NCBI GenBank assembly: GCA_002269645.1
Contig: NIVC01001916.1
Span: 1-64,000 of the forward strand
Reading direction: 5' to 3'
From: Macrostomum lignano
Lineage: Eukaryota
Length of the DNA stretch: 64,000 bases
Position numbers and translations under genes: made by a program. The first letter of the stretch is position 1. Each line of letters starts with the position of its first letter. Positions 14,444-59,067 of this stretch are shown in pieces. The notes below the pieces were generated by a model that did not search any database, had not been told where the DNA came from, and saw nothing but the letters and a program-made list of their open reading frames with translations.

Positions 14444-15434
<991 letters not shown>

Positions 15435-19200: not shown

Positions 19201-19285
19201 GCCTTCAATATCAGCTCACGGCTGCGGCGGCAGCGACAGCAGATCCGTGATCTGCATCAAATACGACTTTGAGACAAATCTGTGA
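16202..19285 (+). CDS. DEG/ENaC (amiloride-sensitive sodium channel superfamily) subunit, 2 exons, ~668 aa
   Basis: Exon 1 16202-17383 (CAG|GTGAGT, phase 0) and exon 2 18461-19285 (CCCGCAG|GCA, in frame with ORF 18482). Motifs: pre-TM1 STAHG, TM1 + YFSYPV, FPDVTIC, YGNCFTF, Cys-rich thumb, VQVRVY, TM2 LFSDIGGILGLWVGISVITIFE with GxS filter. Confidence 0.93.
17431..17485 (+). mobile_element. tRNA-derived SINE-like fragment in the ENaC intron
   Basis: GCAGTTGACTCTCGCGCCGCAACCCCTGGTTCGATTCC: B-box GGTTCGATTCC; similar to the 10184-10250 element. No complete cloverleaf. Confidence 0.45.
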
Positions 19286-24590: not shown

Positions 24591-27500
24591 TCACAATCCG
24601 GCCCCAGTCTGATTGTCCTCCTCAGCCGCAGCTGCCAGCACCGCAGCCTCAGCTTCAAGCCGTTTCTTAGTCCGCTTGTCAGCGTGCGGCACGGCGCCCC
24701 AGGCCAGCTGGTGTCGGCACAGGGCCTCGATGGGACCCAGCACGGCGGGAAGGCAGTCTGACCGGTGCTCCAACGCATCGACAGCCAAGGCGGCAGCCTC
24801 AGCGGTGCACAGACAGCCGACATCTGGCTGTGTTCGAATCACGTAAGCTGACGGGGTGTTGGGCGCGGCAACCCGGATATGGGGCAGCTTGTGCAGGAAG
24901 TCGTTGTGAAAGTGCAGCCCGCTGGCCTGCTGCCAGGTGCCGTCGAGGACCACCAGAGTGGTCACGCTGCCGCGGGGCAGAGACTCCGCTAGCACCGAGT
25001 CGCTGCTGGGATACAGCACAGCGCAGCCGGGGGAATCGAGCTCGCGACGTCGCTTGTGGCTGGCGAAATGACGGCCGCGCCAGATTTCAACTCGACCGGG
25101 CGCCGCGGCCAGCTGCAGCATGCGGGCCGTCTGCAGCTTGCGATGCTCCTGCCAGGGGGGGGATTTGTCCTCATTTGTAGGTTTGTAGGAACAATAGAGC
25201 AAGGTACTGCTGCTTTGCATTCCGGTCCAATGTTCACTCTACTGATTCTTAGAAATCGTTTCTTTCCAGTGACTCTTAGAAACCCATGAACTGATTCTTA
25301 GAAATCACAGCATCCAGAGTTTCTAAGAAATCACATTGACTAGAAATCTAATCCACTGATTCTTTAAAATCAATTCTCTGATTCTTAAAAATCTCATTCA
25401 CTGATTCCCAGAAATTTCAACCAAACATTCTCAGAAATCTCATTTACTGATTCTCAAAAATCTCATGATCCACTTATTCTCAAAAATCTCATCATCCACT
25501 TATTCTCAAAAATCTCATCATCCACTTATTCTCAAAAATCTCATCATCCACTTATTCTCAAAAATCTTATCATCCACTGATTCTCAAAAATCTCATCATC
25601 CAAAATCTCATCCTCAAATTCTCAGAAATCTCATCCACTGATTCTTAGAAATCTTATCATCACTGATTCTTAGAAATCTCATTATCCACTTATTCTCAAA
25701 AATCTCATCATCCACTGATTCTCAAAAATCTCATCATCTACTGATTCTCAAAAATCTCACCATCTACTGATTCTCAAAAATCTTATCATCCACTGATTCT
25801 CAAAAATATCATCATTTACTGATTCTCAAAAATCTTATCATCAAATGATTCTCAGAAATCTCATTTGTTGATTCTTAGAAATCTCCTCCTTAGATTCTCA
25901 GAAATCTCATCTGCTGATTCTTAGAAATCTAATCCACTGATTCCTTGAAAGCATATCTTTTAGTGATTCCTAGAGATCATATTTTCAGTGATTCTTAGAA
26001 ACATCATTCACTGATTCTCAGAAATCTTATCATCAAATGATTCTCAGAAATCTCATTTGTTGATTCTTAGAAATCTCCTCCTTAGATTCTCAGAAATCTC
26101 ATCTGCTGATTCTTAGAAATCTAATCCACTGATTCCTTGAAAGCATATCTTTTAGTGATTCCTAGAGATCATATTTTCAGTGATTCTTAGAAACATCATT
26201 CACTGATTCTCAGAAATCTCATTATCCACTGATTCTCAGAAGTCTCATCACATACTGAATTTTAGATATCCAGAAATTTCTTAGATTTCCCTTATTTTAG
26301 TCGGTAAAACTTGTTGGTACATGTGCGAGAACCCTTTCTCCCTACAGAACAGGCCCCAGCCTTAGTTTTCATCTTAGGCTTTCCGTGCATTTTTTAGAAC
26401 ATTCTATTTTTTCCGCACACACCTCAGACAGCTCAAAATGCAAATATGAACGTGATTAAAAAATGCAGCCCTTCAAACTCTACCAAAAATGAAGAAATTC
26501 AAGCCAACACATTAAATAGCAGCTAACTAGCATGCTCCAAGTCTGCAAACTTCGCGTACGTGTAGGGAGCTCTGTGAACCAACACGTTAGTAAAATACGA
26601 ACCAATGTCTGCATAGCTAACACCAAAGCAGGTGAAAAAAAGTTTGCATGACTGCACGTGTGACGGTTAACTTTTTATTAGAGATCCAACATCATTTTAT
26701 GCGGTATTTACTCGGGGGAGGGGGTAGATGGCTGCTGAGGCACTGATGGACTGAGGTGATTAAGGAAGGGGGATAGCCGGTCCTCAGGGTGACTGAGGTG
26801 CTTCAGGAATGGGGATAGCCGGTCCTCAGGGTGACTAGAGGTGCCTCAGGAAGGGGGATAGCCGGTCCTCAGGGTGACTAGAGGTGCCTCAGGAAGGGGG
26901 ATAGCCGGTCCTCAGGGTGACTAGAGGTGCTTCAGGAAGGGGGATAGCCGGTCCTCAGGGTGACTAGAGGTGCCTCAGGAAGGGGGATAGCCGGTCCTCA
27001 GGGTGACTAGAGGTGCTTCAGGAAGGGGGATAGCCGGTCCTCAGGGTGACTAGAGGTGCTTCAGGAAGGGGGATAGCCGGTCCTCAGGGTGACTGAGATG
27101 CTTCAGGAAGGGGGATGGCAGTTTAAAGTAGCAGCAAAATATCGAACTAAAGCTTCAGAATTGCATAAAACTATCTGAATTTGCCTTTTAGTTTCCCAAA
27201 AATTTCAGCAAACAGAAAAGGTCGAATGGCATATAAAACCAAAAGCAGACTGGGCAGGAAACTCTTGCCGATTCCAAATCAAGTCGGGTCTGCAACCCCG
27301 GCTATTCCCTAGGGAAATCTGTTCTAGGGCAGATAACGACACACGACGCAGGCAAAGGCGCACAATACGAGTATCTGTGGGACACCTAGAGGCGTGAAAA
27401 CTGTTATTCCCGCAGTAACAACCGAGCCCACAGCGGATATCCTAGAGTTCTCTGGTTCGAAAACTACAGAGCGTAGTATAATGAAAACTCGGGATCCGTG

Positions 27501-34747: not shown

Positions 34748-35245
34748 TTAGACAGCCACACGAGCATGAGTAGACTCATTCAGATGCTCATCAACCGCAT
34801 TAATCTCGTCCAGATCGACCTGCGGATTCTGCCCGCAGTCATTGCCAGACTGCTCAGCAATCTCCTTTATCATGGCTTGCATTGACCGCTGACGGTGCTG
34901 CTGGCTTCTCTGCCGCCGGTCTCGAGTTCGCTTGAGTCTGCGCACGTTGCCAGCCGCCAGGCTGTAGCCCTTGTGCAGGGTGAGCAGCACGCCGCACAGA
35001 GAGGCGCCGACGCTCCAAACAGATTGAGTTCGAACGACATGCGACTCAGCCAGAATGCCGCTCTTCCATTCGAAGAAGAGAAAGAACTGCTTCTTCAGTC
35101 TCGTGTCCGCAGTTGGTCGCATCGGCCCTGCCTGAGTTCGCTTCATGCGCCGCCGTCTCCGCCGCCTCCGCCCGTCTGTTGCGTTGTCCGACTTGCTCGG
35201 CGCTTCTGGCGTGTTTTCTATGAAATACGAAGCCGCCAAGCTGCT
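34748..35245 (-). CDS. PACC1: PAC homologue exon 6 (last ECD strands, TM2, C-terminus)
   Basis: Acceptor TTCTTCAACAACGCGCAG|AGC, phase 0; FFEWK, W...LCG...K TM2, basic juxtamembrane tail, TAA. Confidence 0.9.
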   Translation of the reverse strand, partial: SSLAASYFIENTPEAPSKSDNATDGRRRRRRRRMKRTQAGPMRPTADTRLKKQFFLFFEWKSGILAESHVVRTQSVWSVGASLCGVLLTLHKGYSLAAGNVRRLKRTRDRRQRSQQHRQRSMQAMIKEIAEQSGNDCGQNPQVDLDEINAVDEHLNESTHARVAV

Positions 35246-37884
35246 CTGCGCGTTGTTGAAGAATGATTTGAACAAACTTTTATTATAAAAATTCAAGCAA
35301 TATGCTGAAGAAGAAGAAATTGTAGAAGAAATATTGTATCTCCAAATAGTGTCTTTAAGCGTTGTGAAATTAAGGTCTCGTGAAATTTAGGGCTTGTGAA
35401 ATTTAGGTCTTGTGAAATTTAGGTCTTGTGAAATTTAGGTCTTGTAAAATTTAGGGCTTGTGAAATTTAGGTCTTGTGAAATTTAGGGCTTGTGAAATTT
35501 AGGTCTTGTGAAATTTAGGTCTTGTGAAATTTAGGGCTTGTAAAATTTAGGGCTTGTGAAATTTAGGTCTTGTGAAATTTAGGGCTTGTGAAATTTAGGT
35601 CTTGTGAAATTTAGGTCTTGTGAAATTTAGGGCTTGTGAAATTTAGGGCTTGTGAAATTTAGGTCTTGTGAAATTTAGGGCTTTTGAAATTTAGGTCTTG
35701 TGAAATTTAGGGCTTTTGAAATTTAGGTCTTGTGAAATTTAGGGCTTTTGAAATTTAGGTCTTGTGAAATTTAGGGCTTGTGAAATTAAGGGCTTGTGAA
35801 ATTTAGGTCTTGTGAAATTTAGGGCTTTTGAAATTTAGGTCTTGTGAAATTTAGGTCTTGTGAAATTTAGGTCTTGTGAAATTTAGGTCTTGTGAAATTT
35901 AGGGCTTTTGAAATTTAGGTCTTGTAAAATTTAGGGCTTTTGAAATTTAGGTCTTGTGAAATTTAGGGCTTTTGAAATTTAGGTCTTGTGAAATTTAGGT
36001 CTTGTGAAATTTAGGGCTTGTGAAATTAAGGGCTTGTGAAATTTAGGGCTTGTGAAATTTAGGTCTTGTGAAATTTAGGTCTTGTGAAATTTAGGTCTCG
36101 TGAAATTTAGGTCTTGTGAAATTTAGGGCTTGTGAAATTTAGGGCTTGTGAAATTTAGGGCTTGTGAAATTTATAGTTTATGCAGTCTGATGCAAGTTTT
36201 GTTTCCGACGTTGTGAAATTTAGGGTTTGGGAAAGCTCTGCCCCCTGACACTCTGAAAATATATTAGGCAACCAATATTTGGATCCGAGAAAGCCCCGCT
36301 GACCTCCATATCTAGAATGGTCCTAGCTGGTCCTTCTCCATCTTCCAGGTGCAGCTGGGTCATGCTGATCTTGCCCCACAGGCGCAGGCCTGCCGACGCA
36401 GCGTGCAAGGACTCCTGGGCGTGAGCTCGGGCTATGCGGTCTAATCTGAGTTGGTCCGGTCTGAAAACATGATCAGTACGGTTTTTGGAGTGCTTTTTGA
36501 TTGAATTATTAATTGAAACATAATGATCATATTACGGAAGTCAACACATCAATAGCTCACTCAGGTGACAATCATATTACAGAAATCAGCACATCAATAG
36601 CTCACTCAGGTGACAATCATATTACAGAAATGAGCACATCAATAGCTCAATCAGGTGACAATCATGTTACAGATACCAGCACATCAATAGCTCACTCAGG
36701 TGACAATCATATTACAGAAATCAGCACATCAATAGCTCACTCAGGTGACAATCATATTACAGAAATCAGCACATCAATAGCTCACTCAGGTGACAATCAT
36801 ATTACAGAAATGAGCACATCAATAGCTCACTCAGGTGACAATCATATTACAGAAATCAGCACATCAATAGCTCACTCAGGTGACAATCATATTACAGAAA
36901 TGAGCACATCAATAGCTCACTCAGGTGACAATCATATTACAGAAATCAGCACATCAATAGCTCACTCAGGTGACAATCATATTACAGAAATGAGCACATC
37001 AATAGCTCACTCAGGTGACAATCATATTACAGAAATGAGCACATCAATAGCTCACTCAGGTGACAATCATATTACAGAAATGAGCACATCAATAGCTCAC
37101 TCAGGTGACAATCATATTACAGAAATCAGCACATCAATAGCTCACTCAGGTGACAATCATATTACAGAAATGAGCACATCAATAGCTCACTCAGGTGACA
37201 ATCATATTACAGAAATCAGCACATCAATAGCTCACTCAGGTGACAATCATATTACAGAAATGAGCACATCAATAGCTCACTCAGGTGACAATCATATTAC
37301 AGAAATCAGCACATCAATAGCTCACTCAGGTGACAATCATATTACAGAAATGAGCACATCAATAGCTCACTCAGGTGACAATCATATTACAGAAATGAGC
37401 ACATCAATAGCTCACTCAGGTGACAAATCAGCATCGAATTCCAAACTCACAGCGCACTGAACTCGGAGAAGTTGTGCATCAGCAGAAAGGACATGGTGTA
37501 AAAGTCCTGACTGTGACTGTGGGTGACAAAGTGCAGAAACACGGTCTCCTTCTCCTTGACCCTTCTCGGTCCCCGAAAAACTATTACGGGATGGGAGTCG
37601 TTTAACCGGAGTGAGTAAGGGTCATTGTACTCCACTGAGATGAAGGTGCAGTTTATTGTTTGCAGATTCCAGTCCGAGGCATTGTCTGCAATGAAGACGG
37701 TCAATCATGAATTACTTTAATAGGTAAATATCTATTTAATCCCAGCACACAAGACAGAAGTATCAAAGGTAAATACCAATAGCAACAACAACAACATAAA
37801 CAATAAAAAAACATTAGCAACAACAACAATAGCAACAACAACAAAATTAACAATAACAACAACATTAACAAAAATAACAATAGC

Positions 37885-37923
<39 letters not shown>

Positions 37924-38250
37924 AGTAACAACAACAACATTAACAATAACAAAAACATTAACAATAACAACAATAGCAACAACAACAACAACAACTATAA
38001 CAATAGCAACAACAACAAAATTAACAATAACAATAGATAGCATTAACAACAACAACAATAGCAACAACAACAACAAAAACAATAACAACAACAAGAAACA
38101 ACAAAAACAACAACAATATCAATAAAAACAACAAAAACAACAAAAACAAAACAAAAACAGTAGCAACAGCAGCAACAACAACAATAACAACAACAACAAG
38201 ATCAACAATAACAACAACAATAAAAATAACAGCAACAATAAAAATATATC

Positions 38251-38289
<39 letters not shown>

Positions 38290-41200
38290 AACATCAACAA
38301 TAAAAATATATCAACAACAACAACAACAACAACAACAACAGCATCAACAATAACTGCAACAATAAAAATATATCAACAACAACAAAAACAACAACAACAA
38401 TAACAGTAGCAACAGCAATAACAACAACAACAACAACAAAAACAACATCAACAATAACAGCAACAATAAAAATAATATCAACAACAACCGAACAGCAAGA
38501 TCAAATAAACAAATCACAAACATGGATTTCACTAGCAAACATGTGCAACTCTAAATCAGCATCGTTGAATCAGTCGCTATTTCGGTTAGAAACCCACTGT
38601 ACGAGCGTACAGTAAAAAAGTACAACTTTTGATCATGAAGAAATGATAAAAGTAAAACTCACTCCAGAATTCCATCTGCAGCTCATTGAAATGATTGCAG
38701 GACTCGAGGTGCGCCTTCTCCGGGAAAATCACGATGGCTGATTGGAAACATATTCAAGTGCGAAAAAATATTGATTGATTTTTCTTGCTTCATAAACTTT
38801 AGCCTATCGGGTAATTAGATTAAGCTGTCAGTTGATTAATTGAACAGAAATCAGTCTTTTCGAGTCAACCAACAACAATCGTACAAGCCATTGTCTGGGG
38901 TTGTCAAACAATGGAGCTTAGATCGCATGGGATATCAGTTCCAGGCAATTGTTTTTCCCATAGATCTACTCCATTCTCTCAGTGTTTCTCTGTATGATAA
39001 AAATGGGTGCATGGGCGCTCAGAGATTTTTTCTGCTTACATCATGGCACGGAGTATTTTATATCAGATGTTTGGTTTGATTGGTGTGTGCCTCTGATATT
39101 TTGCTTATTTTTGACAGGCTGACAACACAGTTGACAATCAAGGGCGCCGCTAACTACTGAAGGATCTGAGAGAGACAGCGGCGCCACTACTGAAGGATCT
39201 GAGAGAGACAGCGGCGCCACTACTGAAGGATCTGAGAGAGACAGCGGCGCCACTACTGAAGGATCTGAGAGAGATAGTGGCGCCACTACTGAAGGATCTG
39301 AGGGAGACAGTGGCGCCACTACTGAAGGATCTGAGGGAGACAGTGGCGCCACTACTGAAGGACCTGAAGGGTCTGAGAGGGATAGTGGCGCCACTACTGA
39401 AGAATCTGAAGGAGACAGTAGCACCACTACTGAAGGATCTGAAAGAGATAGTGGCGCCACTACTGAAGAATCTGAGGGGGACGGTAGCGCCACTACTGAA
39501 GAATCTGAGGGAGACGGTAGCGCCACTACTGAAGGATCTGAGGAGACGGTGGTGCCGCTACTGAAGGATCAGAAGGAGACGGTGGCGCCACTACTGAAGG
39601 ATCTGAGAAAGACAGCGGCGCCACTCCTGAAGGATCTGAGGGAGACAGCAGCGCCCCTGCTGAAGGACCTGAAAGGTCTGAGAGAGACAGCGGCGCCACT
39701 ACTGAAAGGGGATCTGAAGAGAGATAATGGCGCCACTCCTGAAGGATCTGGGGGAGACAGTGGCGCCACTACTGAAGAATCTGAGGAAGACAGTAGCGCC
39801 ACTACTGAAGGATCTGAGGGAGACAGTAGAGCCACTACTGAAGGATCTGAGGAAGACAGTAGAGCCACTACTGAAGGATCTGAGGGAGACAGTAGCGCCA
39901 CTACTGAAGGATCTGAGGGAGACAGCAGCGCCCCTGCTGAAGGACCTGAAAGGTCTGAGAGAGACAGCGGCGCCACTACTGAAAGGGGATCTGAAGAGAG
40001 ATAATGGCGCCACTCCTGAAGGATCTGGGGGAGACAGTGGCGCCACTACTGAAGAATCTGAGGAAGACAGTAGCGCCACTACTGAAGGATCTGAGGGAGA
40101 CAGTAGAGCCACTACTGAAGGATCTGAGGAAGACAGTAGAGCCACTACTGAAGGATCTGAGGGAGACAGTAGCGCCACTACTGAAGGATCTGAGGGAGAC
40201 AGTAGCGCCACTACTGAAGGATCTGAGGGAGACAGTAGCGCCACTACTGAAGGATCTGAGGGAGACAGTAGCGCCACTACTGAAGGATCTGAGAGAGACA
40301 GTAGCGCCACTACTGAAGGATCTGAGGGAGACAGTAGAGCCACTACTGAAGGATCTGAGAGAGATAGTGGCGCCACTACTGAAGGATCTGATGGAGATAG
40401 TGGCGCCACTACTGAAGGATCTGAGGGAGATAGTGGCGACACTACTGAAGGATCTGAGGGAGACAGTGGCGCCACTACTGAAGGATCTGAGGGAGATAGT
40501 GGCGCCACTACTGAAGGATCTGAGAGAGATAGTGGCGCCACTACTGAAGGATCTGAGAGAGATAGTGGCGCCACTACTGAAGGATATGAGGGAGATAGTG
40601 GCGCCACTACTGAAGGATCTGAGAGAGATAGTGGCGCCACTACTGAAGGATCTGAGAGAGATAGTGGCGCCACTACTGAAGGATATGAGGGAGATAGTGG
40701 CGCCACTACTGAAGGATCTGAGGGAGATAGTGGCGCCACTACTGAAGGATCTGAGGGAGATAGTGGCGCCACTACTGAAGGATCTGAGGGAGATAGTGGC
40801 GCCACTACTGAAGGATCTGGGGGAGACAGTAGCGCCACTACTGAAGGACCTGAAGTGACAATCAGCTGAGTAAGGATCTGGGGGAGACAGTGGCGCCACT
40901 ACTGAGGGACCTGAAGTGACAATCAGCTGAGTAAGCATCTGGTGGACAGTTTTTGAGGCAGAAAAAATTGACAACATGACTGACAAGCTGTTAGATAGGC
41001 TTCGAAGCAATCTTTTTCAAAGCCTGCCTTTCATCCAAGCCACTGGAGTGCACCAGTGCATCCCTAAGCCTGAAATCCCGGAAGTGCAGTCAGTGTGCCG
41101 CGCTGTCTGTTATTAATTATAAACTGCAGTAGCAACGGAGGCCCTGATGGGACGGGAGGGCTCAGACAGACTCCCTGTGTATCAATATTTATATAGAATT

Positions 41201-43806
41201 CATTTATGACGAGGCCACATCAGCAATAAAGGATGCCTGTGAGATCTCAGCCTCTAGGAAAGATATTGTTGTCATGCTCATTGAGAAGGGATAGGTGGGG
41301 ATGGGATCGATTGGGATGGGATAGATTGGGATGGGAGAGATAGGGATGGGATGAATATAAAGCAAAAAGCATCAGTCAGAAGCTGCTCATAAAGCATCGG
41401 TCAGAAGCTGCTCATAAAGCATCGGTCAGAAGCTGCTCATAAAGCATCGGTCAGAAGCTGCTCATACAGCATCGGTCAGAAGCTGCTCATACAGCATCGG
41501 TCAGAAGCTGCTCATACAGCATCGGTCAGAAGCTGCTCATAAAGCATCAGTCAGAAGCTGCTCATACAGCATCGGTCAGAAGCTGTTCATAAAGCATTGG
41601 TCAGAAGCTGTTCATAAAGCATTGGTCAGAAGCTGCTCATAAAGCATCGGTCAGAAGCTGTTCATAAAGCATTGGTCAGAAGCTGCTCATAAAGCATCGG
41701 TCAGAAGCTGCTCATAAAGCATCAGTCAGAAGCTGCTCATACAGCATCGGTCAGAAGCTGTTCATACAGCATCGGTCAGAAGCTGCTCATAAAGCATCGG
41801 TCAGAAGCTGTTCATAAAGCGTCGGTCAGAAGCTGCTCATACAGCATCGGTCAGAAGCTGCTCATAAAGCATTGGTCAGAAGCTGCTCATAAAGCATCGG
41901 TCAGAAGCTGCTCATAAAGCATCGGTCAGAAGCTGCTCATAAAGCATCGGTCAGAAGCTGCTCATAAAGCATCGGTCAGAAGCTGCTCATAAAGCATCGG
42001 TCAGATGCTGCTCATAAAGAATCGGTCAGAAGCTGCTCATACAGCATCGGTCAGAAGCTGCTCATAAAGCATCAGTCAGAAGAAGCTCATACAGCATCGG
42101 TCAGAAGCTGTTCATAAAGCATTGGTCAGAAGCTGCTCATAAAGCATCGGTCAGAAGCTGTTCATAAAGCGTCGGTCAGAAGCTGCTCAGAAAGCATCGG
42201 TCAGAAGCTGCTCATAAAGCATCGGTCAGAAGCTGCTCATACAGCATCGGTCAGAAGCTGCTCATAAAGCATCGGTCAGAAGCTGCTCATAAAGAATCGG
42301 TCAGAAGCTGCTCATACAGCATCGGTCAGAAGCTGCTCATAAAGCATCAGTCAGAAGAAGCTCATACAGCATCGGTCAGAAGCTGTTCATAAAGCATTGG
42401 TCAGAAGCTGCTCATAAAGCATTGGTCAGAAGCTGCTCATAAAGCATCGGTCAGAAGCTGTTCATAAAGCATTGGTCAGAAGCTGCTCATAAAGCATCGG
42501 TCAGAAGCTGCTCATAAAGCATTGGTCAGAAGCTGCTCATACAGCATCGGTCAGAAGCTGTTCATAAAGCATTGGTCAGAAGCTGCTCATAAAGCATCGG
42601 TCAGAAGCTGTTCATAAAGCGTCGGTCAGAAGCTGCTCATACAGCATCGGTCAGAAGCTGCTCATAAAGCATTGGTCAGAAGCTGCTCATAAAGCATCGG
42701 TCAGAAGCTGCTCATACTCACCAGGGGCCTCAAATTCTTCCACCGGTCGGTGCTTGAGCGACCGAACCGGGAACCGCAGCGCCAGCAGCAGCTCCTCGAG
42801 CAGCTGCACGGCGAACAGACAGGCAGCTAAGCCGAAGGCGGTGAGCACTGCAGTGCAGACCAGTCTGCACACGTACTCGCTGCGGGTCATGTGCCGCTCC
42901 GCAGTCGGCGCTGCTGTCACCGAAGCCGCATCCGACGACGTTGATCGACGCTTTTTTCTTTGTCTTGTCCGGCCGTTTATCGGCGCGAATTGGATCAGTG
43001 CGCGACGCTTTTGTAGCCAAGTTCGCTGGCGGAGTGACGGCTGGGCGGCTGGGCTGCAATGCGATGGCGTGGGAGCGTAGATATCTAATCTAATCTAATC
43101 TAATCTAGTCTAATATAATCTAGTCTAGTCTAGTCTAGTCTAATCTAATCTAGTCTAGTCTAGTCTAGTCTAGTCTAGTCTAGTCTAGTCTAATCTAATC
43201 TAGTCTAGTCTAGTCTAGTCTAGTCTAGTCTAATCTAGTCTAGTCTAGTCTAGTCTAATCTAGTCTAATCTAATCTAATATAGTCTAGTCTAATCTAGTT
43301 AAATCTAATCTAGTCTAGTCTAATATAATCTAGTCTAGTCTAGTCTAATCTAGTCTAATCTAATCTAATATAGTCTAGTCTAATCTAGTTAAATCTAATC
43401 TAGTCTAGTCTAATATAATCTAGTCTAGTCTAGTCTAATCTAATCTAGTCTAATCTAATCTAATCTAATCTAGTCTAGCCTAGTCTAGTCTAATATAATC
43501 CAGTCTAATATAATCCAGTCTAATATAATTTAATCCAGTCTAATCTAGTCTGACCTAATCTAGTTTAATATAATCTAGTCTAGTTTTATCTAATCTAATA
43601 TCCGTCTTTTTCACACTAGTTTTTCATAATAAATTTCCTCCCAAGTTTCTGCATTAACAATGTATCTCGATAGATTTTGCATACTTCGCTGGAACAACCG
43701 AAATCCGAGCCTGCTGCTGCTGCTGTTGCTGCTGTTGCTGCTGTTGCTCCAGCCTCTCACCGACATCGCCGGAGTTCTGCAGTCGATCATCTGCATCCAA
43801 CTCCAT
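34748..43806 (-). CDS. PACC1: Proton-activated chloride channel (PAC/ASOR/TMEM206) homologue, 6 exons, 472 aa
   Basis: Exons 43806-43685, 43053-42722, 38737-38663, 37685-37451, 36460-36304 and 35245-34748; all GT-AG, phases 2,1,1,2,0 match, total 1419 nt with no stop. Collinear similarity to human PAC as recalled: FPVRSLKHRPVEEFEAPAIVIFPEKAHLESCNH ~ HPVMSVSYKEVDRYDAPGIALYPGQAQLLSCKH; NCTFISVEYNDPYS...VFRGPRRVKEKETVFLHF ~ NCTTQRINYTDPFS...VQGPREVKKRELVFLQF; SAGLRLWGKISM...EDG ~ SGGFRTWVKMSL...EDG; FFEWK...VWSVGASLCGVLLTLHK ~ VFEWK...PWNTIALLCGAFLALFK. Confidence 0.9.
35310..36232. mobile_element. Relative of the 30.5-kb foldback element with its 16-bp arm repeat (GTGAAATTTAGG(T/G)CTT) expanded to ~50 copies (35378-36172); PAC intron 5
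   Basis: Left flank GAAATTGTAGAAGAAATATTGTATCTCC matches the 30650-30680 spacer. Right flank TTTATAGTTTATGCAGTCTGATGCAAGTTTTG matches the reverse complement of 30565-30605. Confidence 0.8.
36304..36460 (-). CDS. PACC1: PAC homologue exon 5
   Basis: Acceptor ATGTTTTCAG|A, donor GAG|GTCAGC; SAGLRLWGKISMTQLHLEDG. Confidence 0.88.
36525..37425. repeat. 45-bp minisatellite, ~20 near-identical copies; PAC intron 4
   Basis: Unit CATATTACAGAAAT(G/C)AGCACATCAATAGCTCACTCAGGTGACAAT. Confidence 0.97.
37451..37685 (-). CDS. PACC1: PAC homologue exon 4
   Basis: Acceptor TTCATTGCAG|AC, donor CT|GTGAGT; NCT, DPY and GPRRVK..E.VFL.F motifs. Confidence 0.92.
37780..38515. repeat. (AAC)n degenerate microsatellite; PAC intron 3
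   Basis: Direct. Confidence 0.95.
38663..38737 (-). CDS. PACC1: PAC homologue exon 3 (75 nt; IVIFPEKAHLESCNHFNELQMEFW)
   Basis: Acceptor TTTCCAATCAG|CC, donor GGA|GTGAGT; absent from the ORF track. Confidence 0.85.
39150..40915. repeat. 33-bp GC-rich minisatellite (AGTGGCGCCACTACTGAAGGATCTGAGGGAGAT), ~50 copies with a 277-bp higher-order duplication; PAC intron 2
   Basis: Direct; the diagnostic GCGCCCCTGC variant recurs at 39651 and 39928. Confidence 0.95.
41365..42716. repeat. 25-bp satellite (GAAGCTGCTCATAAAGCATCGGTCA), ~54 copies; PAC intron 2
   Basis: Direct; abuts the exon 2 donor. Confidence 0.97.
42722..43053 (-). CDS. PACC1: PAC homologue exon 2 (cytoplasmic N-terminus, TM1, first ECD strand)
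   Basis: Acceptor CATTGCAG|C, donor CCTG|GTGAGT; TM1 VCRLVCTAVLTAFGLAACLFAVQLL followed by FPVRS...EAP. Confidence 0.88.
43083..43600. repeat. (TCTAG/TCTAA)n pentanucleotide microsatellite; PAC intron 1
   Basis: Direct. Confidence 0.95.
43685..43806 (-). CDS. PACC1: PAC homologue exon 1 (MELDADD...Q12...VVPA)
   Basis: ATG at 43806, donor AA|GTATGC, phase 2. No sequence homology anchors this exon; inferred from phase and position. Confidence 0.65.
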
Positions 43807-44875: not shown

Positions 44876-45453
44876 CTAGGTTAGCTGACAAAGTAGAATT
44901 CTAGTAATGCGCAGGAAGTTCAAAGTTGAAAAATGTTTAAAAATCAAGACCATGAAACGAAGTACAAGGCTAATAAATAAGCATGAAAAACTTTTTAACG
45001 GTTTGCCCATTGCGTTAGCTGGGTAGTTCTTGTAGAAAATGTTCCAGAACACACCGAAAAGAAACATACAAGCCAGCACAACCCAGCACACGATCGATAC
45101 CTTGCTCTCCCACGGTTTCTTGTCGATGTTTCGTAGAATGGGAACTCCAGCAAAGAACCCAGCCAGCAGGCCTCCGACGTGAGCAGCAACGCTCACAGGG
45201 AGGGTTTGAGTTCCGGAGTAGCGTCCATAGAAACTGATGCCAAAGTCCAGGATGAGCAAGAGGGTCAGATAGACAAGGCGCATGATCCCACTCAGAAGGA
45301 ATTTCAACGGATTTGCTCTGATATCCAGCCAGTCATCCTGCAGCTCCTCCCAGTTCATGAGCACTGTGGCATAGTGGGCTCCGAACAAAGCGTACACCCC
45401 ACCGGAGGCTCCGATCAGCATGGTGTTGTGGTCTGCGATGCTGCTAGCCATGG
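44876..45453 (-). pseudogene. 5'-truncated rhomboid copy (TM4-TM7 only), fused to unrelated 3' sequence
   Basis: 45453-~45018 is near-identical to the C-terminal third of the intact copies (MASSIADH...GASGG...AAHVGG...KNYPA); the frame continues ~45 codons into AT-rich non-homologous DNA. Confidence 0.85.
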
Positions 45454-46524
45454 ATTTTTCCGCTATTATTGTCAATAGAAATTCAAAGCTTCACAATATC
45501 AGAACAACCCTTAGACTGCACCGTGTATAGTATCCATGCACAGTTGTCCATCGCTGTATGCGTTTATCAGGAGCTGACATACTCAATTAATATTATACTC
45601 AATCTCCAAGTAGGCTTGGAGATCAAAATATCTATATTTCTTTATGGGCGAGAAATCTTCGAAAGAGTCAGCCGCCATCTTCGTCCATTTGGCCGACACT
45701 TAACTGCCTTGATCTCCATATTTTGCCTGAAGTTTTTAAATGCTAGAGGGCTTCTGGGGTTGCTCAGATCCTTGGAGACAAAGCTCTGAGAGGAGGATCT
45801 GATATCTAAGATTCGATAGCTGGCTTTCGGTCTAATGCTGTTTTGCTTTAAACACCATCTTCCTTAGTAAATTTACTTCACAATAGTGTGACTCCACAAA
45901 GTCAAAACCTACATGTAGTCGATTCAAAAATCTTTATTCCTTTCTTTTTTTGCCTCCCCAGAGGGGGGCGCAGATCGCTAGTCCATACACTATTTATCCA
46001 GGCGTAGCCTTTAAAGTTGGATATGCAACTAGCTTAACCACTGCACCGTCTGTCCAAGTTGTTTATTATTGTGAGACATTTTCAGGCTGCGAAAGCCCAA
46101 CATCATGAGCATGAAGATAGAATGTGAGATAGAGAGAGCTGGGGGCGCTCTATCGCTTCGTTTGCTGTCCGTCTATTCAGTTTTTTTCTATATAGAAGTA
46201 ACTGAGAAAGTAAGAAGCTTCTAACTAAAATATAGACGGAAAGTAAGGGTTCTAACGGACAAGAGCAGTTTGTTTTCAAAATTTTGACAAAAGAGACTTA
46301 ATTAATATTGTCCTTTTTTCGTAAAACAAGATGACAAATTTTTTTTTGTTTTTCGATCGAATTAACTTCTTATGCCAGGATTGCGATGACCAAGTTGCTG
46401 CAGAAACTCAATTTCATTCATTTCAGAGAATATCGAGCGCTCGATATTCTCTGATTCATTTCTAAACCGTTAATTTCTTCCTCTAGTATTGATCGATCAA
46501 GATGCCACAAACATCTAGCTACAT

Positions 46525-49394: not shown

Positions 49395-51020
49395 TTATCC
49401 TATCGAGTCGGCCAGCGCTGTGTTGGAGCAGATGATGCTGTCAGCTGCTGGGTAGTTCTTGTAGAAAATGTTCCAGAACACACCGAAAAGAAACATGCAA
49501 GCCAGCACAACCCAGCACACGATCGACACCTTGCTCTCCCACGGTTTCTTGTCGATGTTTCGTAAAATGGGAACTCCAGCAAAGAACCCAGCCAGCAGGC
49601 CTCCGACGTGAGCAGCAACGCTCACAGGGAGGGTTTGAGTTCCGGAGTAGCGTCCATAGAAACTGATGCCAAAGTCCAGGATGAGCAAGAGGGTCAGATA
49701 GACAAGGCGCATGATCCCACTCAGAAGGAATTTCAACGGATTTGCTCTGATATCCAGCCAGTCATCCTGCAGCTCCTCCCAGTTCATGAGCACTGTGGCA
49801 TAGTGGGCTCCGAACAAAGCGTACACCCCACCGGAGGCTCCGATCAGCATGGTGTTGTGGTCTGCGATGCTGCTGGCCATGGCACCAATAATGACGCCGA
49901 TGAAGAAGACTGGTGCAACACGCCAAGCCTTGTGTACAGTCTCAAGAGGCACACCTAGAAGGAACGACAGGATCGTGTTGAAGACGACGTGGTGGTAGCC
50001 ATTGTGCAGGAACATGTAGGACACGAAGCGCCAAGCTTCTTGTCGGAGACTCGGACAGAAGACCAGCGGACTGTAGTACGGGAATCCTTTTTCCCATCCC
50101 ACCTTGTTCCACTCGGGTCCCTTGGACAGCTCAACCGTGTAGATGATGAAGAAGATCCAAACGGCTACATAGAACAGCGGAATGAAGAGCGGTGGCGGCC
50201 TGCAGTTGTACGCCTCAAGGTAGCTCTCTTCCGGGATCGGCTCTCCGGCTTGAGCTGCCTGGATCTTCTCTTTGCGAAGCTTCTTCTGCGCTGCAGGCGT
50301 CATGCTCTCGATGAACGAGTTGATGACTCTCTTCGATCGAGACACCTCCGACTTTTTCGTGTACTTCATTCCGGTAAAGAACTCGTCCCAAGACACTCGT
50401 TGATTTCCGTCTTTGTCCAGCCTCTTAAACAGTCCCTGAAGGTTTCGAGACCGGTTAAAGTTGACAGACTCTGCCATTTCCTTAAACTCCTTGAGCGGCA
50501 TGCCTCCAGCAGTCTCGTACGGATCGAAGCGGTACTTGAAGTTCTTGGTGAGCCACTCTCTGTACTGGTCTTCGTTCATGTGCTCAGAGTTGTCGCAGTT
50601 CGACGAAGCGCACACGCTGACTGCGAGACTTCCGCCTCCAGGACCTCCGTCAGGCTTGTCGTGTCCGGAGACGCTGAGGAAGTTTCTGTTTGTGTTTGAC
50701 GCAGTGACAGTCGGATGCTGCATCTCGAACTGCTGGTTCGCGAACTGGGTCTTGAGCGACTGGCTCGTTCCGTTTCCGTTGGCTGCGGTCCCGCCGCCGA
50801 TACTTTGCGAGTATTCGTATCGTCCGGTAGCTGAGGCAGGATACTGCTGTCTGGTGTCCAGCTCCACCCGAACTTCCGGGACAGAGTAGCCATACTGGAG
50901 CTGCCGCTGACCGGACGATGTGGTTGTGGCGACTCTCTGCTGCGTCTGGGACTGGTAACTTTGGGACTGGTTGGACTGCTGAGCCTGGGGCTGCATCGTG
51001 TAGTAGCCGCGATTGTCCAT
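49395..51020 (-). CDS. EF-hand rhomboid intramembrane serine protease (RHBDL/Rhomboid-4-like), copy A, intronless, 541 aa
   Basis: EF-hand loop DKDGNQRVSWDE, CRPPPLFI, L1 loop EAWRFVSYMFLH, HxxxN (HVVFN), catalytic GASGG and AAHVGG. Confidence 0.95.
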   Translation of the reverse strand: MDNRGYYTMQPQAQQSNQSQSYQSQTQQRVATTTSSGQRQLQYGYSVPEVRVELDTRQQYPASATGRYEYSQSIGGGTAANGNGTSQSLKTQFANQQFEMQHPTVTASNTNRNFLSVSGHDKPDGGPGGGSLAVSVCASSNCDNSEHMNEDQYREWLTKNFKYRFDPYETAGGMPLKEFKEMAESVNFNRSRNLQGLFKRLDKDGNQRVSWDEFFTGMKYTKKSEVSRSKRVINSFIESMTPAAQKKLRKEKIQAAQAGEPIPEESYLEAYNCRPPPLFIPLFYVAVWIFFIIYTVELSKGPEWNKVGWEKGFPYYSPLVFCPSLRQEAWRFVSYMFLHNGYHHVVFNTILSFLLGVPLETVHKAWRVAPVFFIGVIIGAMASSIADHNTMLIGASGGVYALFGAHYATVLMNWEELQDDWLDIRANPLKFLLSGIMRLVYLTLLLILDFGISFYGRYSGTQTLPVSVAAHVGGLLAGFFAGVPILRNIDKKPWESKVSIVCWVVLACMFLFGVFWNIFYKNYPAADSIICSNTALADSIG

Positions 51021-53981: not shown

Positions 53982-56900
53982 TTAGCCTTGGGGGTGCGCC
54001 CAGTCCCCGCCAGTAGTCGGCAGGTCCGCAGTGGAGGCATCGGCGACCCTCATCCGGCCGGAGTCCCGGACGAAGGCGCGGAGGTCTCGGATATTGTCCG
54101 CGGTGGTCAGCTCGTCCATCCGCTGGGGGTGGCCGAGGTATTTGTGCCGCGCCTTGTTGAAGTAAGGGCAGAAGGTGACGTGATGCTCCGCGGTCTCCTC
54201 TCCTATGCCACAGAAGGGACAGGTGGGAGGGCAACCGGTTTGCAACGATATATGTCTCTGGAAGAATCCGTGGCCGGTTAGGACCATGCACATCTCCCTG
54301 AGGTCGGTTCTGTTAAGCGAAATCAGATAATCAGAGACTTTCCTGTTCAGGTTAGGCATGGCAGAGCGGCTCTGCCTGTACTCGGTGCAGCTGTTCCAGT
54401 GGAGCTGGTGCTGCTGATGGAGCCACCTGTTGATATGGCGGGTGACTTGCGACCTGGGGGTGGGTAGCCTCATCAGACGGTGGTTGCCGTCTGGGTTGCT
54501 GCCCTCCTTGGCGAGAGAGTCCGCGAGCTCGTTGCCCAGGATGTTGCTGTGACCAGGTGTCCAGATAATTCTAATCCTGTTAAGGACTGAGAGAGATTGC
54601 ACACTGCGGTGGCATTGAGATACTGTAGCAGCGGAGATATTCTCAGTGGTTAAGGCCTTAATAGCAGCTTGGCTATCAGTGTAGAAATTAATGTCAAAAT
54701 TATTAATGTTCGCCTGAAACAGTTGCTGGGCACACTGCTCAATGGCGCAAATTTCAGCTTGGAAAACTGAGGTGTTCTCACCGAGGTGCAGACTTTCCTG
54801 GAGAAGCATCTTACCCTCGTGGAAAATGGCAATACCCGCTCCAGCGCGGCCGTTGAACAGCGAGCCGTCGGTGAAGCAGTGAATGCCCTGGCTGCGCCGG
54901 TTCACACCGACATCCAGCGGAATGTTGTCTCGGCCAGGGATGGCGGTCTTGAAGCCCCTCCTGATGTTGAGGGCGGGAGGTCGACTATCCACATTGCCCA
55001 GGTCCATGTGGATGTTGTTAAGGTCGCGGCGGACAAAGTCCATATGCGGGATTAATGTTTTCATTGGCATAAAGCCAGAGGGCGCGTTATTTAACGTTTT
55101 ATCTCTGATAAGCCGGGAGGCAGACTTCATAGCCTCCGCCCTAATAAATAGGTGAAGCGGAGGTAGGTTAAGGATAGTGTTCAGCCCCTCGTAAGGGGTG
55201 GACGGGTACGCACCTGTGATGGCACGGCAAATGCTGCCCTGAAGCTGGTACAGCCGCTGACGGGCGGCCTTCTGCTCCAGCACGCTAGTCCAGATGAGAC
55301 TCGCGTATGTGATACTGGGCCGGATGATGCCGGTATAAATCCAACGGACCGTTCTAGGCGAGAGGCCCCAAGTCGGCCCGATGGCTCTGCGCAGCTGGGC
55401 AAAGCAGCGTTTTGCCCGACCGATGACGTTATCAAGGTGCTTCGTCCAGCGCAGGTCATGCGTTAGCGTCACACCGAGGTATTTGACCTCCTTCTTGAAG
55501 GGGATGTTTCTGCCATAGACAGTGAGGTTTTTCATCTCCCATTTACGGCGCTTGGTGAAAACGACAGCGACAGTCTTAGTGACGCTGATTTTTAGGCCAT
55601 GCTGTGTAGCCCAGTCGGCCGCCTTGTCGGCGAATTGCTGCATCAGGTTGCGCAGAGTGGCGGGGTCGGGTCCGCTGACGACCGCGGCAACGTCATCGGC
55701 GTAGCCCGCCCTGGTGATACTGCTGGGAATGTCAGCGGTTAGAAGTTCGTCCATGACGAGATTCCAGAGAAGTGGAGTTAGCACGCCACCTTGCGGGCCG
55801 CCTTTCATCACCGCCCGGGTGAGGGTAACGCCCATAAGTGTGGATGTCACAAACCTTTTGCGGATCATAAAATAAATCCAGCGAACAATGCTGTGTCTTA
55901 CATTCCTGCGGGAAAGAGAATTTCTGAAGGAGCGGAAGAGGACATTGTCAAATGCTCCTTCGAAGTCAACGAACAACCCGCAAGCGAGTTGTTTGCTAAG
56001 GATGGCACTCTCAATTTTGGAGGTAATGGCGTGGAGAGCATGCTCAGTCGTCCTCCCAGGCTGGAAGGCGTACTGGTACTTACTGACAGGGTCGGAGCGC
56101 AGGTCGCACTCTCGAAGCCTCCACAGGATGAGCCTCTCCATCAGCTTAACACAAAAGGAAGTGAGGCTGATGGGCCGGAAGGATTTCACGTTGGTGTAGT
56201 CACCCTTAGCAGGTTTCGGGATGAACACGACTCTGGACATTCTCCAGATTGTGGGAATGTAACCTGTGGTATAACAGTCAACAAGCAATTTAGAGAAAGA
56301 ATCAGCAAAGTTTTGCAGCTTTAGCGCCTCCTGCAGGATACAGGGGGCGATATTGTCAGGGCCAGACGATTTATACGGTTTAAAAGAATTTGCTGCCAGC
56401 TGGAGTAGCTGGGGGTGGCGCACTGCTGGAAAAGCTTGTGATCACAAGGCCTGTGGTCATCGACCACGTACTCCGGTTCGTCAACCTGCGGAAAGCAGGT
56501 GGAGAAAAGAAGATTTAGCGAACCTTCGGCACTGGTAGTGTAGTTACCATCCAGGTGCAGAAGGGAGTTACACTGAGCTAGCGTGTCGTGCCTGAGAGTC
56601 CTGACCAGCCGGGCTGTGGGGTGTTGCCCTTCCAGGCCGGCGCAGTAGGCTTTCCAGGTGGTCTTCTTAGCCCTTCGGATAGCACTTTTGTACATCCTCA
56701 GAGCAGAGTGGTAGTTCTCCCAATCCTCTGGGGTATTCGAGCCGTTTGCGAGGCGTTGCAGTCGGCGGGTGTTTTTCTTCATGCGAGTGAGCTCTTGACT
56801 CCACCAAGGAGAGTATTTCTTCCTGCAAAACAGCTTAGGGGCGTTAGCGCGTATGGCGGTGTTTAGGATCTCAACGAGGGAGTTGCACCGATGCTCAATG

Positions 56901-57798
56901 CCAGGGAGATCCTCGCTGGAGTCCGGTAAGTTGGCTTCGGTCAGGAGTTTTAGCAGGTCTCTTCGAAAACCTGTCCAGTCGGCCTTTTTCAAATTAAGGC
57001 GGTCCCGGTTCTCATGACGGGCTCCGACGGAGCTGATGCTGTACTGAATGTACGAGTGGTCGGAAAGCGATGGGAGGTCATCCCTAACCAGCCAGCTGTG
57101 GACCTGATTGAGGGCGTTGTTGGAGACGAGAGTGAGGTCGATAACCTCACGCCGATTAGAGACAATAAATGTGGGTTTGCTGCCTCTGTTGCAAATGTGT
57201 AACGAGGAGGAGTTAATGAAATCAATTAGTAAGTCACCGCGCCTGTTAGTATCGCTACTAGACCAGGCAGTGTTGTGGGCGTTAGCATCGCAGCTAACGA
57301 TAAGCTTCCGATCCTGGAGATTACAGAAGTCCGCCAGCTCCTGCAGGAGGGGGGGAGGGACGTCCTCCTGAATGTCCAGGTAAGCGGAAACGAAGGTCAA
57401 GTCAAAGACTGAGAAAGTACACATGTCTTTAGAGCAAAACATTGGCATAATAGTGGCCGGGAGGTCGTTTTTGACGAGGGCGATAGCTCTGGGGGTGTCG
57501 TTCGCGCAGAGGTACAGAACCTGATAGCCTGGCGGCAGGCAGGTCGGCTTCCCCTTGCGGGTATACGGTTCCTGAATAAGGTAGATGTCAACTTCCTTGT
57601 TGGCAAAGGTGCCTGAAAGGTTGCTAGATGCTGCAAGGGCGTGGTGCAGGTTGATCTGAATAATGTGCAGGTTAACAGGTTGGTTCGCCGGCGGCGGATT
57701 ATTTATTTGGTTGCTGGTGGCAGTGTCATCATTGGGCTGGCCGTTAAGGTTCGCCCTCAGCGCCCCGCTCCTAGTTTGGCACGGGGTTGGGAACGGCA

Positions 57799-57799
<1 letters not shown>
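53982..57799 (-). CDS. Retrotransposon ORF2 (APE endonuclease, reverse transcriptase, RNase H, C-terminal zinc finger) with one frameshift at ~56411-56415
   Basis: APE: QINLHH, IQEPY, CDANAH, IDLT, SDH. RT: [53 protein letters not shown]. RNase H: [36 protein letters not shown]. Zinc finger: CPFC...EHHVTFC. Confidence 0.93.

Positions 57800-59067
<1,268 letters not shown>

What the first reader, a model, noticed from the sequence alone, without database searches (positions are those of the whole stretch)
34748..43806. Hidden six-exon invertebrate homologue of the proton-activated chloride channel PAC/TMEM206
Seen: exon fragments scattered between satellites (three visible only as unrelated-looking small ORFs, others partly visible or invisible in the track) splice through five canonical, phase-matched introns into an uninterrupted 472-aa 2-TM protein. 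Knowledge: PAC (PACC1/ASOR) is a trimeric 2-TM acid-gated Cl- channel characterised mainly in vertebrates. Against the human sequence as I recall it, the order of blocks, both disulfide cysteines (C128, C149), GPR-VK--E-VFL-F, EDG, FEWK, W304 and the selectivity lysine K319 are all present. Inference: a true PAC orthologue in what looks like a flatworm-type genome would widen the family's known range and give a distant comparison point for gating studies. Automated annotation would probably fragment or miss it.
Basis: partly seen in the sequence, partly recalled or inferred. Interest (0 to 1): 0.9.

Follow-up and report, generated by a model that had tools for sequence, protein, structure and literature searches.

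The report
Flatworm proton-activated chloride channel gene
The six exon fragments do splice into a complete 472-residue relative of the acid-gated chloride channel PAC/TMEM206 in the flatworm Macrostomum lignano, but public databases already hold this gene in two broken pieces and list relatives in annelids and ribbon worms, so it is a useful annotation repair, not a major surprise.

Summary
Six minus-strand exons between 43806 and 34748 join through five GT..AG introns (phases 2,1,1,2,0) into an open 472-aa protein. It scores 123.8 bits (E 1e-35) on Pfam TMEM206 and E 3e-31 against solved PAC structures.

The organism is Macrostomum lignano. UniProt A0A1I8GFN0 (249 aa) is an exact substring of the model. 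A0A1I8GKN4 (169 aa) covers exons 1-2 and then reads into intron 2. Public annotation therefore already holds the gene, split in two and without the 75-nt exon 3.

Four introns share position and phase with the annelid Owenia orthologue, including an identical 75-nt mini-exon.

Conserved residues include the selectivity lysine (K399), W304, both cysteines, the H130-E181 pair, E250, E261 and K288. The proton-sensor residues H98, E107 and H131 are replaced (F, P, F), so acid gating is plausible but not shown.

Homologues exist in annelids, nemerteans and hemichordates, and M. lignano has a 46%-identical paralogue. This contradicts a 2019 statement that "simpler animals" have no homologues and the gene has no paralogues.

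Identity is solid. Novelty is modest: a new, poorly annotated member of a known family.

The parts
43685..43806 (-). Coding exon 1 (122 nt; Met1 to first two bases of codon 41; includes a 12-Gln run)
   Evidence: ATG at 43806 follows an in-frame stop. The donor AA|GTATGC is phase 2. The E1/E2 junction VVPA-N-PAAQ is reproduced in UniProt A0A1I8GKN4 (P0004).
42722..43053 (-). Coding exon 2 (332 nt): cytoplasmic N-terminus, TM1 (about 42798-42866) and the start of the ectodomain (FPVRSLKHRPVEEFEAP)
   Evidence: Acceptor TTGCAG|C and donor CCTG|GTGAGT, phase 1. Kyte-Doolittle peak of 2.4 at residue 114. Aligns to human 78-113.
38663..38737 (-). Coding exon 3, a 75-nt mini-exon (AIVIFPEKAHLESCNHFNELQMEFW); carries C165 (=C128) and H167 (=H130)
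   Evidence: This is the only candidate from the phase-constrained scan that lies outside the tandem repeats and also aligns to the PAC sequence. It has a CAG acceptor and a GTGAGT donor. It aligns to human GIALYPGQAQLLSCKHHYEV. Owenia has a 75-nt exon at the same place with the same phases.
37451..37685 (-). Coding exon 4 (235 nt): NCT sequon/C189, GPRRVKEKETVFLHF with E223 (=E181), thumb region
   Evidence: Pfam TMEM206 E 2.4e-11 on its own and PDB PAC 1.4e-10. UniProt A0A1I8GFN0 starts exactly here.
36304..36460 (-). Coding exon 5 (157 nt): ...SAGLRLWGKISMTQLHLEDGEGPARTILDME
   Evidence: Acceptor TTTTCAG|A (phase 2) and donor GAG|GTCAGC (phase 0). Both junctions are identical in A0A1I8GFN0 and fall at the same position and phase as in Owenia.
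34748..35245 (-). Coding exon 6 (495 nt plus stop): Arg-rich insertion (about 35099-35191), FFLFFEWK, TM2 (about 34952-35017), K399 codon 34970-34972, about 70-aa cytoplasmic tail
   Evidence: Pfam TMEM206 E 9.8e-8 on its own. Aligns to human 270-338. K319->K399 and W304->W384.
43054..43684 (-). Intron 1 (631 nt), 79% of it a 5-bp tandem array (43084-43584)
38738..42721 (-). Intron 2 (3984 nt): 25-bp satellite 41366-42716 (54 copies, starting 5 nt after the donor), 15-bp array 41280-41352, 33-bp satellite 39153-40914 (52 copies)
   Evidence: The public fragment P0004 reads through into this intron (APG-AYEQLLTDAL).
37686..38662 (-). Intron 3 (977 nt), 72% of it a CAA-type 3-bp array (37783-38488)
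36461..37450 (-). Intron 4 (990 nt), 91% of it a 45-bp satellite (36526-37426, 20 copies). This satellite is the source of the 315-aa plus-strand pseudo-ORF.
35246..36303 (-). Intron 5 (1058 nt), 77% of it a 16-bp satellite (35362-36173, 51 copies)

Best explanation
The locus is a complete, intact protein-coding gene of the flatworm Macrostomum lignano. It encodes a 472-aa member of the TMEM206/PAC (proton-activated chloride channel) family. Shown: six exons splice in frame, the product matches the family model and the solved PAC structures along the whole core, and four intron positions and phases are shared with an annelid orthologue. Inferred by homology: the protein has a cytoplasmic N-terminus, TM1, a beta-rich glycosylated ectodomain (five N-x-S/T sequons), a pore-lining TM2 and a cytoplasmic tail. 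It assembles as a trimer and conducts anions, with K399 (=K319) as the selectivity filter and G392/L395 (=G312/L315) in the gate. Activation by luminal or extracellular acid is the most likely trigger, because the H130-E181 pair, E250/D251, E261, K288 and an acidic residue at D109 are kept. However, the TM1-ectodomain sensor H98, its partner E107, and H131 are replaced (F135, P144, F168). I therefore expect pH dependence that is shifted from, or organised differently to, the vertebrate channel. The introns are 72-91% tandem repeats. That is why public gene prediction broke the gene in two and lost the 75-nt exon 3.
For: Gene model and splice sites. Pfam PF15122 E 1e-35, 123.8 bits. PDB PAC chains E 2.8e-31 to 8e-25, with continuous alignment across exons 2-5 and a second stretch over TM2. 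UniProt A0A1I8GFN0 is an exact substring, residues 178-426, which confirms the E4/E5 and E5/E6 junctions. A0A1I8GKN4 confirms E1/E2. In Owenia the gene has introns at the same four positions with phases 1,1,2,0 and a 75-nt mini-exon. Residue mapping. In a neighbour-joining tree the two Macrostomum proteins are sister to annelids plus nemerteans, with deuterostomes forming a separate clade. TM1 hydropathy and sequons. Exons are 49-63% GC. Introns 1, 3, 4 and 5 are 29-38% GC, and intron 2 is 49%. The functional roles of the residues come from PMC9351481 and PMC7904269.
Against: No transcript data were available here, so exon 3, the start codon and the Arg-rich segment of exon 6 rest on homology and on public gene predictions. 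H98, E107, H131, probably E257, and gate residue L309 (->S389) are not conserved, so proton gating cannot be assumed. No invertebrate PAC has ever been recorded electrophysiologically. The structure prediction for the exon 4-6 fragment was poor (pLDDT 48). The KD hydropathy of TM2 stays below 1.6, although this is expected for a pore-lining helix.
Confidence: 0.85

Rival explanations
1. The gene is real but the true mRNA differs from the 472-aa model. One option is a 502-aa form that uses the downstream E5 donor (36272) and the upstream E6 acceptor (35304). Another is a 441-aa form in which the 93-nt Arg-rich segment (about 35099-35191) is spliced out. A third is further 5' exons.
For: Both alternatives stay in frame. 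Removing the 93 nt would bring the loop back to the length seen in all other orthologues. The N-terminus is not conserved, so the start cannot be checked by homology.
Against: The 502-aa form inserts 30 residues exactly where Owenia, human and the paralogue are contiguous. The Owenia intron sits at the ...E|YS position used in the 472-aa model. The 93-nt segment has a GTCGGA donor, a GAG acceptor, no pyrimidine tract and exon-like GC, and it is retained in A0A1I8GFN0. In human PAC a FLAG tag is tolerated at position 277 in this same loop (PMC9351481), so an insertion here is structurally plausible.
Confidence: 0.12
2. It belongs to the PAC family by descent but is no longer a proton-activated chloride channel. 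It could be gated by another stimulus, constitutively open or silent, or act as a regulatory subunit with the paralogue.
For: H98->F, E107->P, H131->F, E257->R(?) and L309->S. In human PAC, changes at H98 alter pH50, E257 mutants are dead, and L309C is dead (PMC9351481, PMC7904269). H98 is also absent from Owenia, Lineus, Capitella and Lamellibrachia. M. lignano has a second, 46%-identical paralogue.
Against: Human H98A/Q/R mutants remain pH-gated. The H130-E181 pair, E261, K288 and the basic filter residue are kept across all spiralians, which suggests selection for the same core machinery.
Confidence: 0.3
3. It is a decaying or unexpressed duplicate (pseudogene) in a recently duplicated, repeat-rich genome.
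For: The M. lignano genome carries many recent duplicates (my own knowledge). The introns are swamped by satellites. No expression data were seen here.
Against: All six exons are open, all ten splice sites are canonical, and the invariant family residues are intact. A second public copy differs by only one substitution and a poly-Q length change over 151 residues.
Confidence: 0.05

Closest known systems
Human PAC / PACC1 / TMEM206 (PDB 7JNA, 7JNC, 7SQF-H)
   Same: Same family (E about 1e-29 to 1e-31). Same order of TM1, ectodomain and TM2. Conserved: C128, H130, C149 with its NCT sequon, E181, E250, D251, E261, K288, FEWK, W304, G312, L315, K319.
   Different: About 25% identity. The N-terminus (about 100 aa, with poly-Q) and the C-terminal tail are longer. 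There is a 31-aa Arg-rich insertion in the 269-280 loop. H98->F, E107->P, H131->F, E257->R(?), L309->S and F318->H. No N-terminal YxxL-type endocytic motif is evident (from reading the sequence).
Spiralian PAC-like proteins: Owenia fusiformis (466 aa), Tubulanus polymorphus, Lineus longissimus, Capitella teleta, Lamellibrachia satsuma, Ridgeia piscesae
   Same: 26-32% identity. The spiralian-specific TLH[KR]G motif at the filter and a small residue at L309 are shared. Four intron positions and phases and the 75-nt mini-exon are shared with Owenia.
   Different: The Macrostomum proteins are long-branch, with a two-residue insertion before E261. Only this gene has the Arg-rich loop and an extra intron in the N-terminal region.
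M. lignano paralogue A0A1I8HTS3 (743-aa prediction fused to a DDE transposase)
   Same: 46% identity (159 of 342 aligned positions). Near-identical TM2 and FFLFFEWKSGI block.
   Different: H130->Y. It has a 22-aa insertion after exon 3 and lacks the Arg-rich loop. It is a separate locus, not in this window.
ASIC / ENaC / DEG channels
   Same: Trimeric 2-TM architecture with a hand-like ectodomain, as reported for PAC (PMC9351481, PMC7904269). An ASC-family gene lies about 15 kb away in this window.
   Different: [quoted passage not shown] This gene is not a member of that family.

Membership tests
TMEM206 / PAC (Pfam PF15122) | Whole-protein score above the Pfam gathering threshold | tested here: met
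   123.8 bits against a cut-off of 27, E 1e-35, profile positions 26-291 in two stretches.
TMEM206 / PAC | Significant sequence similarity to experimentally solved PAC channels, and to nothing else | tested here: met
   All seven PDB hits at E<=0.001 are PAC chains, E 2.8e-31 to 8e-25.
TMEM206 / PAC | Two transmembrane helices flanking a large ectodomain | tested here: met
   TM1 hydropathy peak of 2.4 at residue 114. TM2 is defined by alignment to human 304-330. Five N-x-S/T sequons lie between them.
TMEM206 / PAC | Basic selectivity-filter residue in TM2 (human K319) | tested here: met
   K399. It is K or R in every homologue examined.
TMEM206 / PAC | H130-E181 pair needed for folding and assembly | tested here: met
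   H167 and E223. Their role is described in PMC9351481.
TMEM206 / PAC | Proton sensor H98 and acidic pocket E107/D109/E250 | tested here: not met
   F135, P144, E146, E294: the histidine and E107 are lost, while D109 and E250 stay acidic. This is a feature of vertebrate PAC gating, not of the Pfam family. Most spiralian members also lack H98.
TMEM206 / PAC | Joint-region residues E257, E261 and K288 | tested here: inconclusive
   E261->E307 and K288->K368 are kept. E257 aligns to R301, but a two-residue indel makes this column uncertain.
TMEM206 / PAC | Conserved ectodomain cysteine pair (C128, C149) | tested here: met
   C165 and C189 are invariant in all aligned sequences. Whether they form a disulfide was not testable.
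TMEM206 / PAC | PAC fold of the ectodomain | tested here: inconclusive
   Only the exon 4-6 fragment could be folded (tool restriction), giving pLDDT 48. The top 10 Foldseek hits are all PAC/ASOR, but TM-scores are 0.24-0.35.
TMEM206 / PAC | Orthology: gene structure and phylogenetic position | tested here: met
   Four introns have the same position and phase as in Owenia, plus the 75-nt mini-exon. The tree follows the species phylogeny. M. lignano has at least two paralogues, so this is a co-orthologue.
TMEM206 / PAC | Homotrimer; acid-evoked outwardly rectifying Cl- current | not testable with these tools
   Needs multimer modelling, biochemistry and patch clamp.

The most novel reading that the evidence does not exclude
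PAC was already present in the last common ancestor of protostomes and deuterostomes and survives in several spiralian phyla. The spiralian channels lack the vertebrate H98/E107 sensor, and this one carries a polybasic RRRRRRRRMKR tract in an exposed ectodomain loop. They may therefore use a different gating logic: a shifted pH range, or proteolytic priming at a furin-like site as in ENaC. That would make them natural 'mutants' for working out how PAC senses protons.
Probability: 0.25. Interest if true: 0.6.

Novelty: new member of a known kind. Interest (0 to 1): 0.35.

Why it matters
The founding paper states that TMEM206 has no homologues below hemichordates and no paralogues (PMC6663466), and later papers describe it as conserved in vertebrates. 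This locus, its Macrostomum paralogue, and the annelid and nemertean relatives show that the family is bilaterian-wide but patchy, and that it can duplicate. A correct full-length flatworm sequence from a transgenic-capable model (M. lignano) gives a distant comparison point. It separates the invariant core (K319, the H130-E181 pair, E261, K288, FEWK, W304) from vertebrate-specific sensor residues (H98, E107, H131). It is also a clean example of how satellite-filled introns and a 75-nt exon defeat automated annotation.

Tried and rejected
(1) A first candidate for exon 3 at 41219-41067 (GLVINEFY...GVCLSPP) was rejected. It has no AG acceptor, and an in-frame TGA sits just upstream. A phase-constrained scan then found 38737-38663.

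(2) The 502-aa model B was rejected on the alignment and the Owenia intron position.

(3) A cryptic 93-nt intron in exon 6 is considered unlikely.

(4) The first homology search with the full protein was swamped by low-complexity words and gave one hit. It was repeated with the masked core and then with a profile.

(5) The spliced protein could not be submitted to the exhaustive search or to AlphaFold because of a tool restriction. A profile of database homologues was used instead, and only the exon 4-6 fragment was folded, poorly.

(6) The look-up of contigs encoding A0A1I8GFN0 found nothing on record.

(7) The best unnamed hits of the exhaustive search could not be assigned to taxa.

(8) Literature searches combining PAC/TMEM206/PACC1 with invertebrate, Macrostomum, annelid, nemertean or protostome terms found no description of a protostome PAC.
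Full report
**1. What is there**

Three-frame translation of the minus strand between 44000 and 34500 shows stop-free blocks that resemble PAC, separated by long tandem arrays. I read the flanks and located the boundaries. A phase-constrained scan for the missing piece between exons 2 and 4 then gave a six-exon model:

| Exon | Coordinates | Note |
|---|---|---|
| E1 | 43806-43685 | starts at the ATG |
| E2 | 43053-42722 | |
| E3 | 38737-38663 | 75 nt |
| E4 | 37685-37451 | |
| E5 | 36460-36304 | |
| E6 | 35245-34748 | includes the stop |

- All five introns are GT..AG with CAG acceptors, and their phases are 2,1,1,2,0.
- Exons are 49-63% GC. Introns 1, 3, 4 and 5 are 29-38% GC. Intron 2, which holds the GC-richer 33-bp and 25-bp satellites, is 49%.
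- tblastn finds only this one copy in the window.

**2. Is it PAC?**

- Single exons already match Pfam TMEM206: E4 at 2.4e-11 and E6 at 9.8e-8.
- The joined protein scores 123.8 bits against a gathering cut-off of 27, E 1e-35.
- Against all PDB sequences, the only hits are the seven distinct PAC/TMEM206 chains, E 2.8e-31 to 8e-25. One continuous alignment runs from TM1 through exons 2-5, and a second covers FFEWK and TM2.
- The human sequence I used for numbering is 350/350 identical to 7JNA.

**3. Whose gene is it, and is it already known?**

- Homology searches return Macrostomum lignano entries.
- UniProt A0A1I8GFN0 ('Proton-activated chloride channel', 249 aa) is an exact substring of my model, residues 178-426. 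It starts at the first residue of exon 4 and contains the E4/E5 and E5/E6 junctions.
- A0A1I8GKN4 (169 aa, misnamed 'TNFR-Cys domain-containing') matches residues 1-151 with one substitution and a five-Gln length difference. It contains the E1/E2 junction and then reads straight into intron 2 (APG-AYEQLLTDAL).
- The window is therefore M. lignano. Public annotation holds this gene, or its allele or homeologue, as two unconnected fragments, and the 75-nt exon 3 is missing from both.
- A third entry, A0A1I8HTS3, is a 46%-identical paralogue fused by prediction to a transposase.

**4. Independent support for the junctions and for orthology**

I fetched the Owenia fusiformis locus and mapped its annotated protein onto the DNA.

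- Its four introns fall after AP-G (phase 1), after a 75-nt mini-exon (phase 1), at ...FNV|S (phase 2) and at ...VE|YS (phase 0).
- These are the same positions and phases as window introns 2-5, and the mini-exon has the same length.
- This supports exon 3 and the 472-aa choice at E5/E6. It argues against an alternative 502-aa model that is also open.
- Capitella and Lamellibrachia predictions show the tell-tale 'APGEY' read-through at the same site.
- A neighbour-joining tree puts the two Macrostomum proteins as sister to annelids plus nemerteans, with human, fish and Ptychodera in a separate clade. This is what descent from a bilaterian ancestor would give.

**5. Anatomy and likely mechanism**

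- The N-terminus of about 100 aa is polar and includes Q12 and a KKRR stretch.
- TM1 has a hydropathy peak of 2.4.
- The ectodomain carries five N-x-S/T sequons, including the conserved NCT.
- TM2 reads VWSVGASLCGVLLTLHKGYSL, and a cytoplasmic tail of about 70 aa follows.

Residue mapping was read against the published mutagenesis (PMC9351481; PMC7904269):

| Status | Residues (human -> window) |
|---|---|
| Kept | K319->K399 (selectivity filter), G312, L315, W304, H130-E181 pair (H167/E223), C128, C149, E250, D251, E261, K288; D109->E |
| Not kept | H98->F135, E107->P144, H131->F168, E257->R301 (alignment uncertain), L309->S389, D289->S, D297->V |

- H98 is also absent from most other spiralian homologues.
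- A 31-aa insertion, SDNATDG-R8-MKRTQAGPMRPTADTR, sits in the loop equivalent to human 269-280. Human PAC tolerates a FLAG tag at position 277 in that loop.
- My reading is that the trimeric anion-channel core is inferred with good confidence. Acid activation is plausible but unproven, and its set-point and sensor layout probably differ from the vertebrate channel.

**6. Structure prediction**

The model is poor (pLDDT 48). Foldseek still ranks ten PAC/ASOR entries first (E 1.6e-4 to 4.7e-3), but TM-scores are 0.24-0.35. I count this as consistent, not as evidence.

**7. How rare is the family outside vertebrates?**

- A word-indexed profile search names annelids (Owenia, Capitella, Lamellibrachia, Ridgeia), nemerteans (Tubulanus, Lineus; RefSeq 'proton-activated chloride channel-like') and M. 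lignano.
- An exhaustive HMMER scan of 1.84 billion representatives finds only 198 proteins at E<=1e-3, many of them exon fragments.
- The named ones are vertebrates and the hemichordate Ptychodera.
- Several divergent full-length environmental sequences have no taxon.
- No arthropod, nematode, mollusc or cnidarian name appeared, but absence was not tested rigorously.

**8. Comparison with the literature**

- Ullrich et al. [quoted passage not shown]
- Deng et al. 2021 call it conserved in vertebrates.
- My searches found no paper describing a protostome PAC.
- The finding therefore corrects the literature, but the databases have silently contained it.

**9. Verdict**

The observation and the identity are confirmed, and the model is well supported. 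This is a new, badly annotated member of a known family and a modest phylogenetic range extension. The altered proton-sensor set makes it a reasonable target for comparative electrophysiology. An interest of 0.9 is too high; I score it 0.35.

Noticed in passing
window 34748-43806 (introns: 43084-43584, 41366-42716, 41280-41352, 39153-40914, 37783-38488, 36526-37426, 35362-36173): Each of the five introns is filled by its own unrelated tandem array (periods 5, 25+15+33, 3, 45 and 16 bp). About 80% of all intron sequence is tandem repeat. The 25-bp satellite starts 5 nt after the exon 2 donor. The long ORFs on both strands here are repeat artefacts.
   Followed up: partly
window 16202-17425 and 18482-19285 (+): Two ORFs match Pfam ASC, the amiloride-sensitive Na+ channel (DEG/ENaC/ASIC) family: E 4e-41 for profile positions 3-336 and E 6e-17 for positions 359-454. 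They are probably two exons of one gene. A member of the family whose fold PAC resembles therefore lies about 15 kb from the PAC gene. This is most likely coincidence.
   Followed up: partly
window 49395-51020, 60350-61972 and 44876-45475 (-): There are two nearly identical 540/541-aa ORFs with a rhomboid domain and an EF-hand, plus a third partial copy. This looks like a recent segmental or tandem duplication, with a retrotransposon lying between the two full copies.
   Followed up: partly
window 53982-58917 (-): An apparently intact non-LTR retrotransposon. Its ORFs carry an endonuclease (Exo_endo_phos_2), a reverse transcriptase plus RNase H, and an upstream ORF1-like protein of 372 aa with no Pfam hit.
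   Followed up: partly
window 24591-25220 (-): A 209-aa ORF with a DTW domain (E 8.5e-23), presumably a DTWD-type tRNA-modifying enzyme gene.
   Followed up: no
window 35099-35191 (-), residues 326-356: A lineage-specific Arg-rich insertion (R8 followed by MKR) in an exposed ectodomain loop. The tract fits a furin-type R-x-K/R-R motif and recalls proteolytic activation of ENaC. It is absent from the paralogue and from all other homologues.
   Followed up: partly
window 43711-43746 (-), residues 21-32: The poly-Gln run is 12 residues here but 7 in the public fragment A0A1I8GKN4, which also has E93Q. This is allelic or homeologous variation.
   Followed up: partly
proteins P0024, P0027, P0028, P0032, P0033, P0037, P0042, P0106 (not in window): These are divergent full-length TMEM206-like proteins from metagenome or unannotated assemblies. 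Some sit on 2-5 kb contigs where the gene must be almost intron-less. They form clades outside both the spiralian and the deuterostome groups, keep the basic filter residue, and have no known taxon. The family may be wider than animals with annotated genomes.
   Followed up: partly
whole window: At least 25 separate tandem-repeat arrays score 300 or more across the 64 kb. They include perfect (CTAT)248 at 14444-15434 and a 16-bp array of 91 copies at 11030-12487. Repeat load is high throughout the window, not only in this gene.
   Followed up: no
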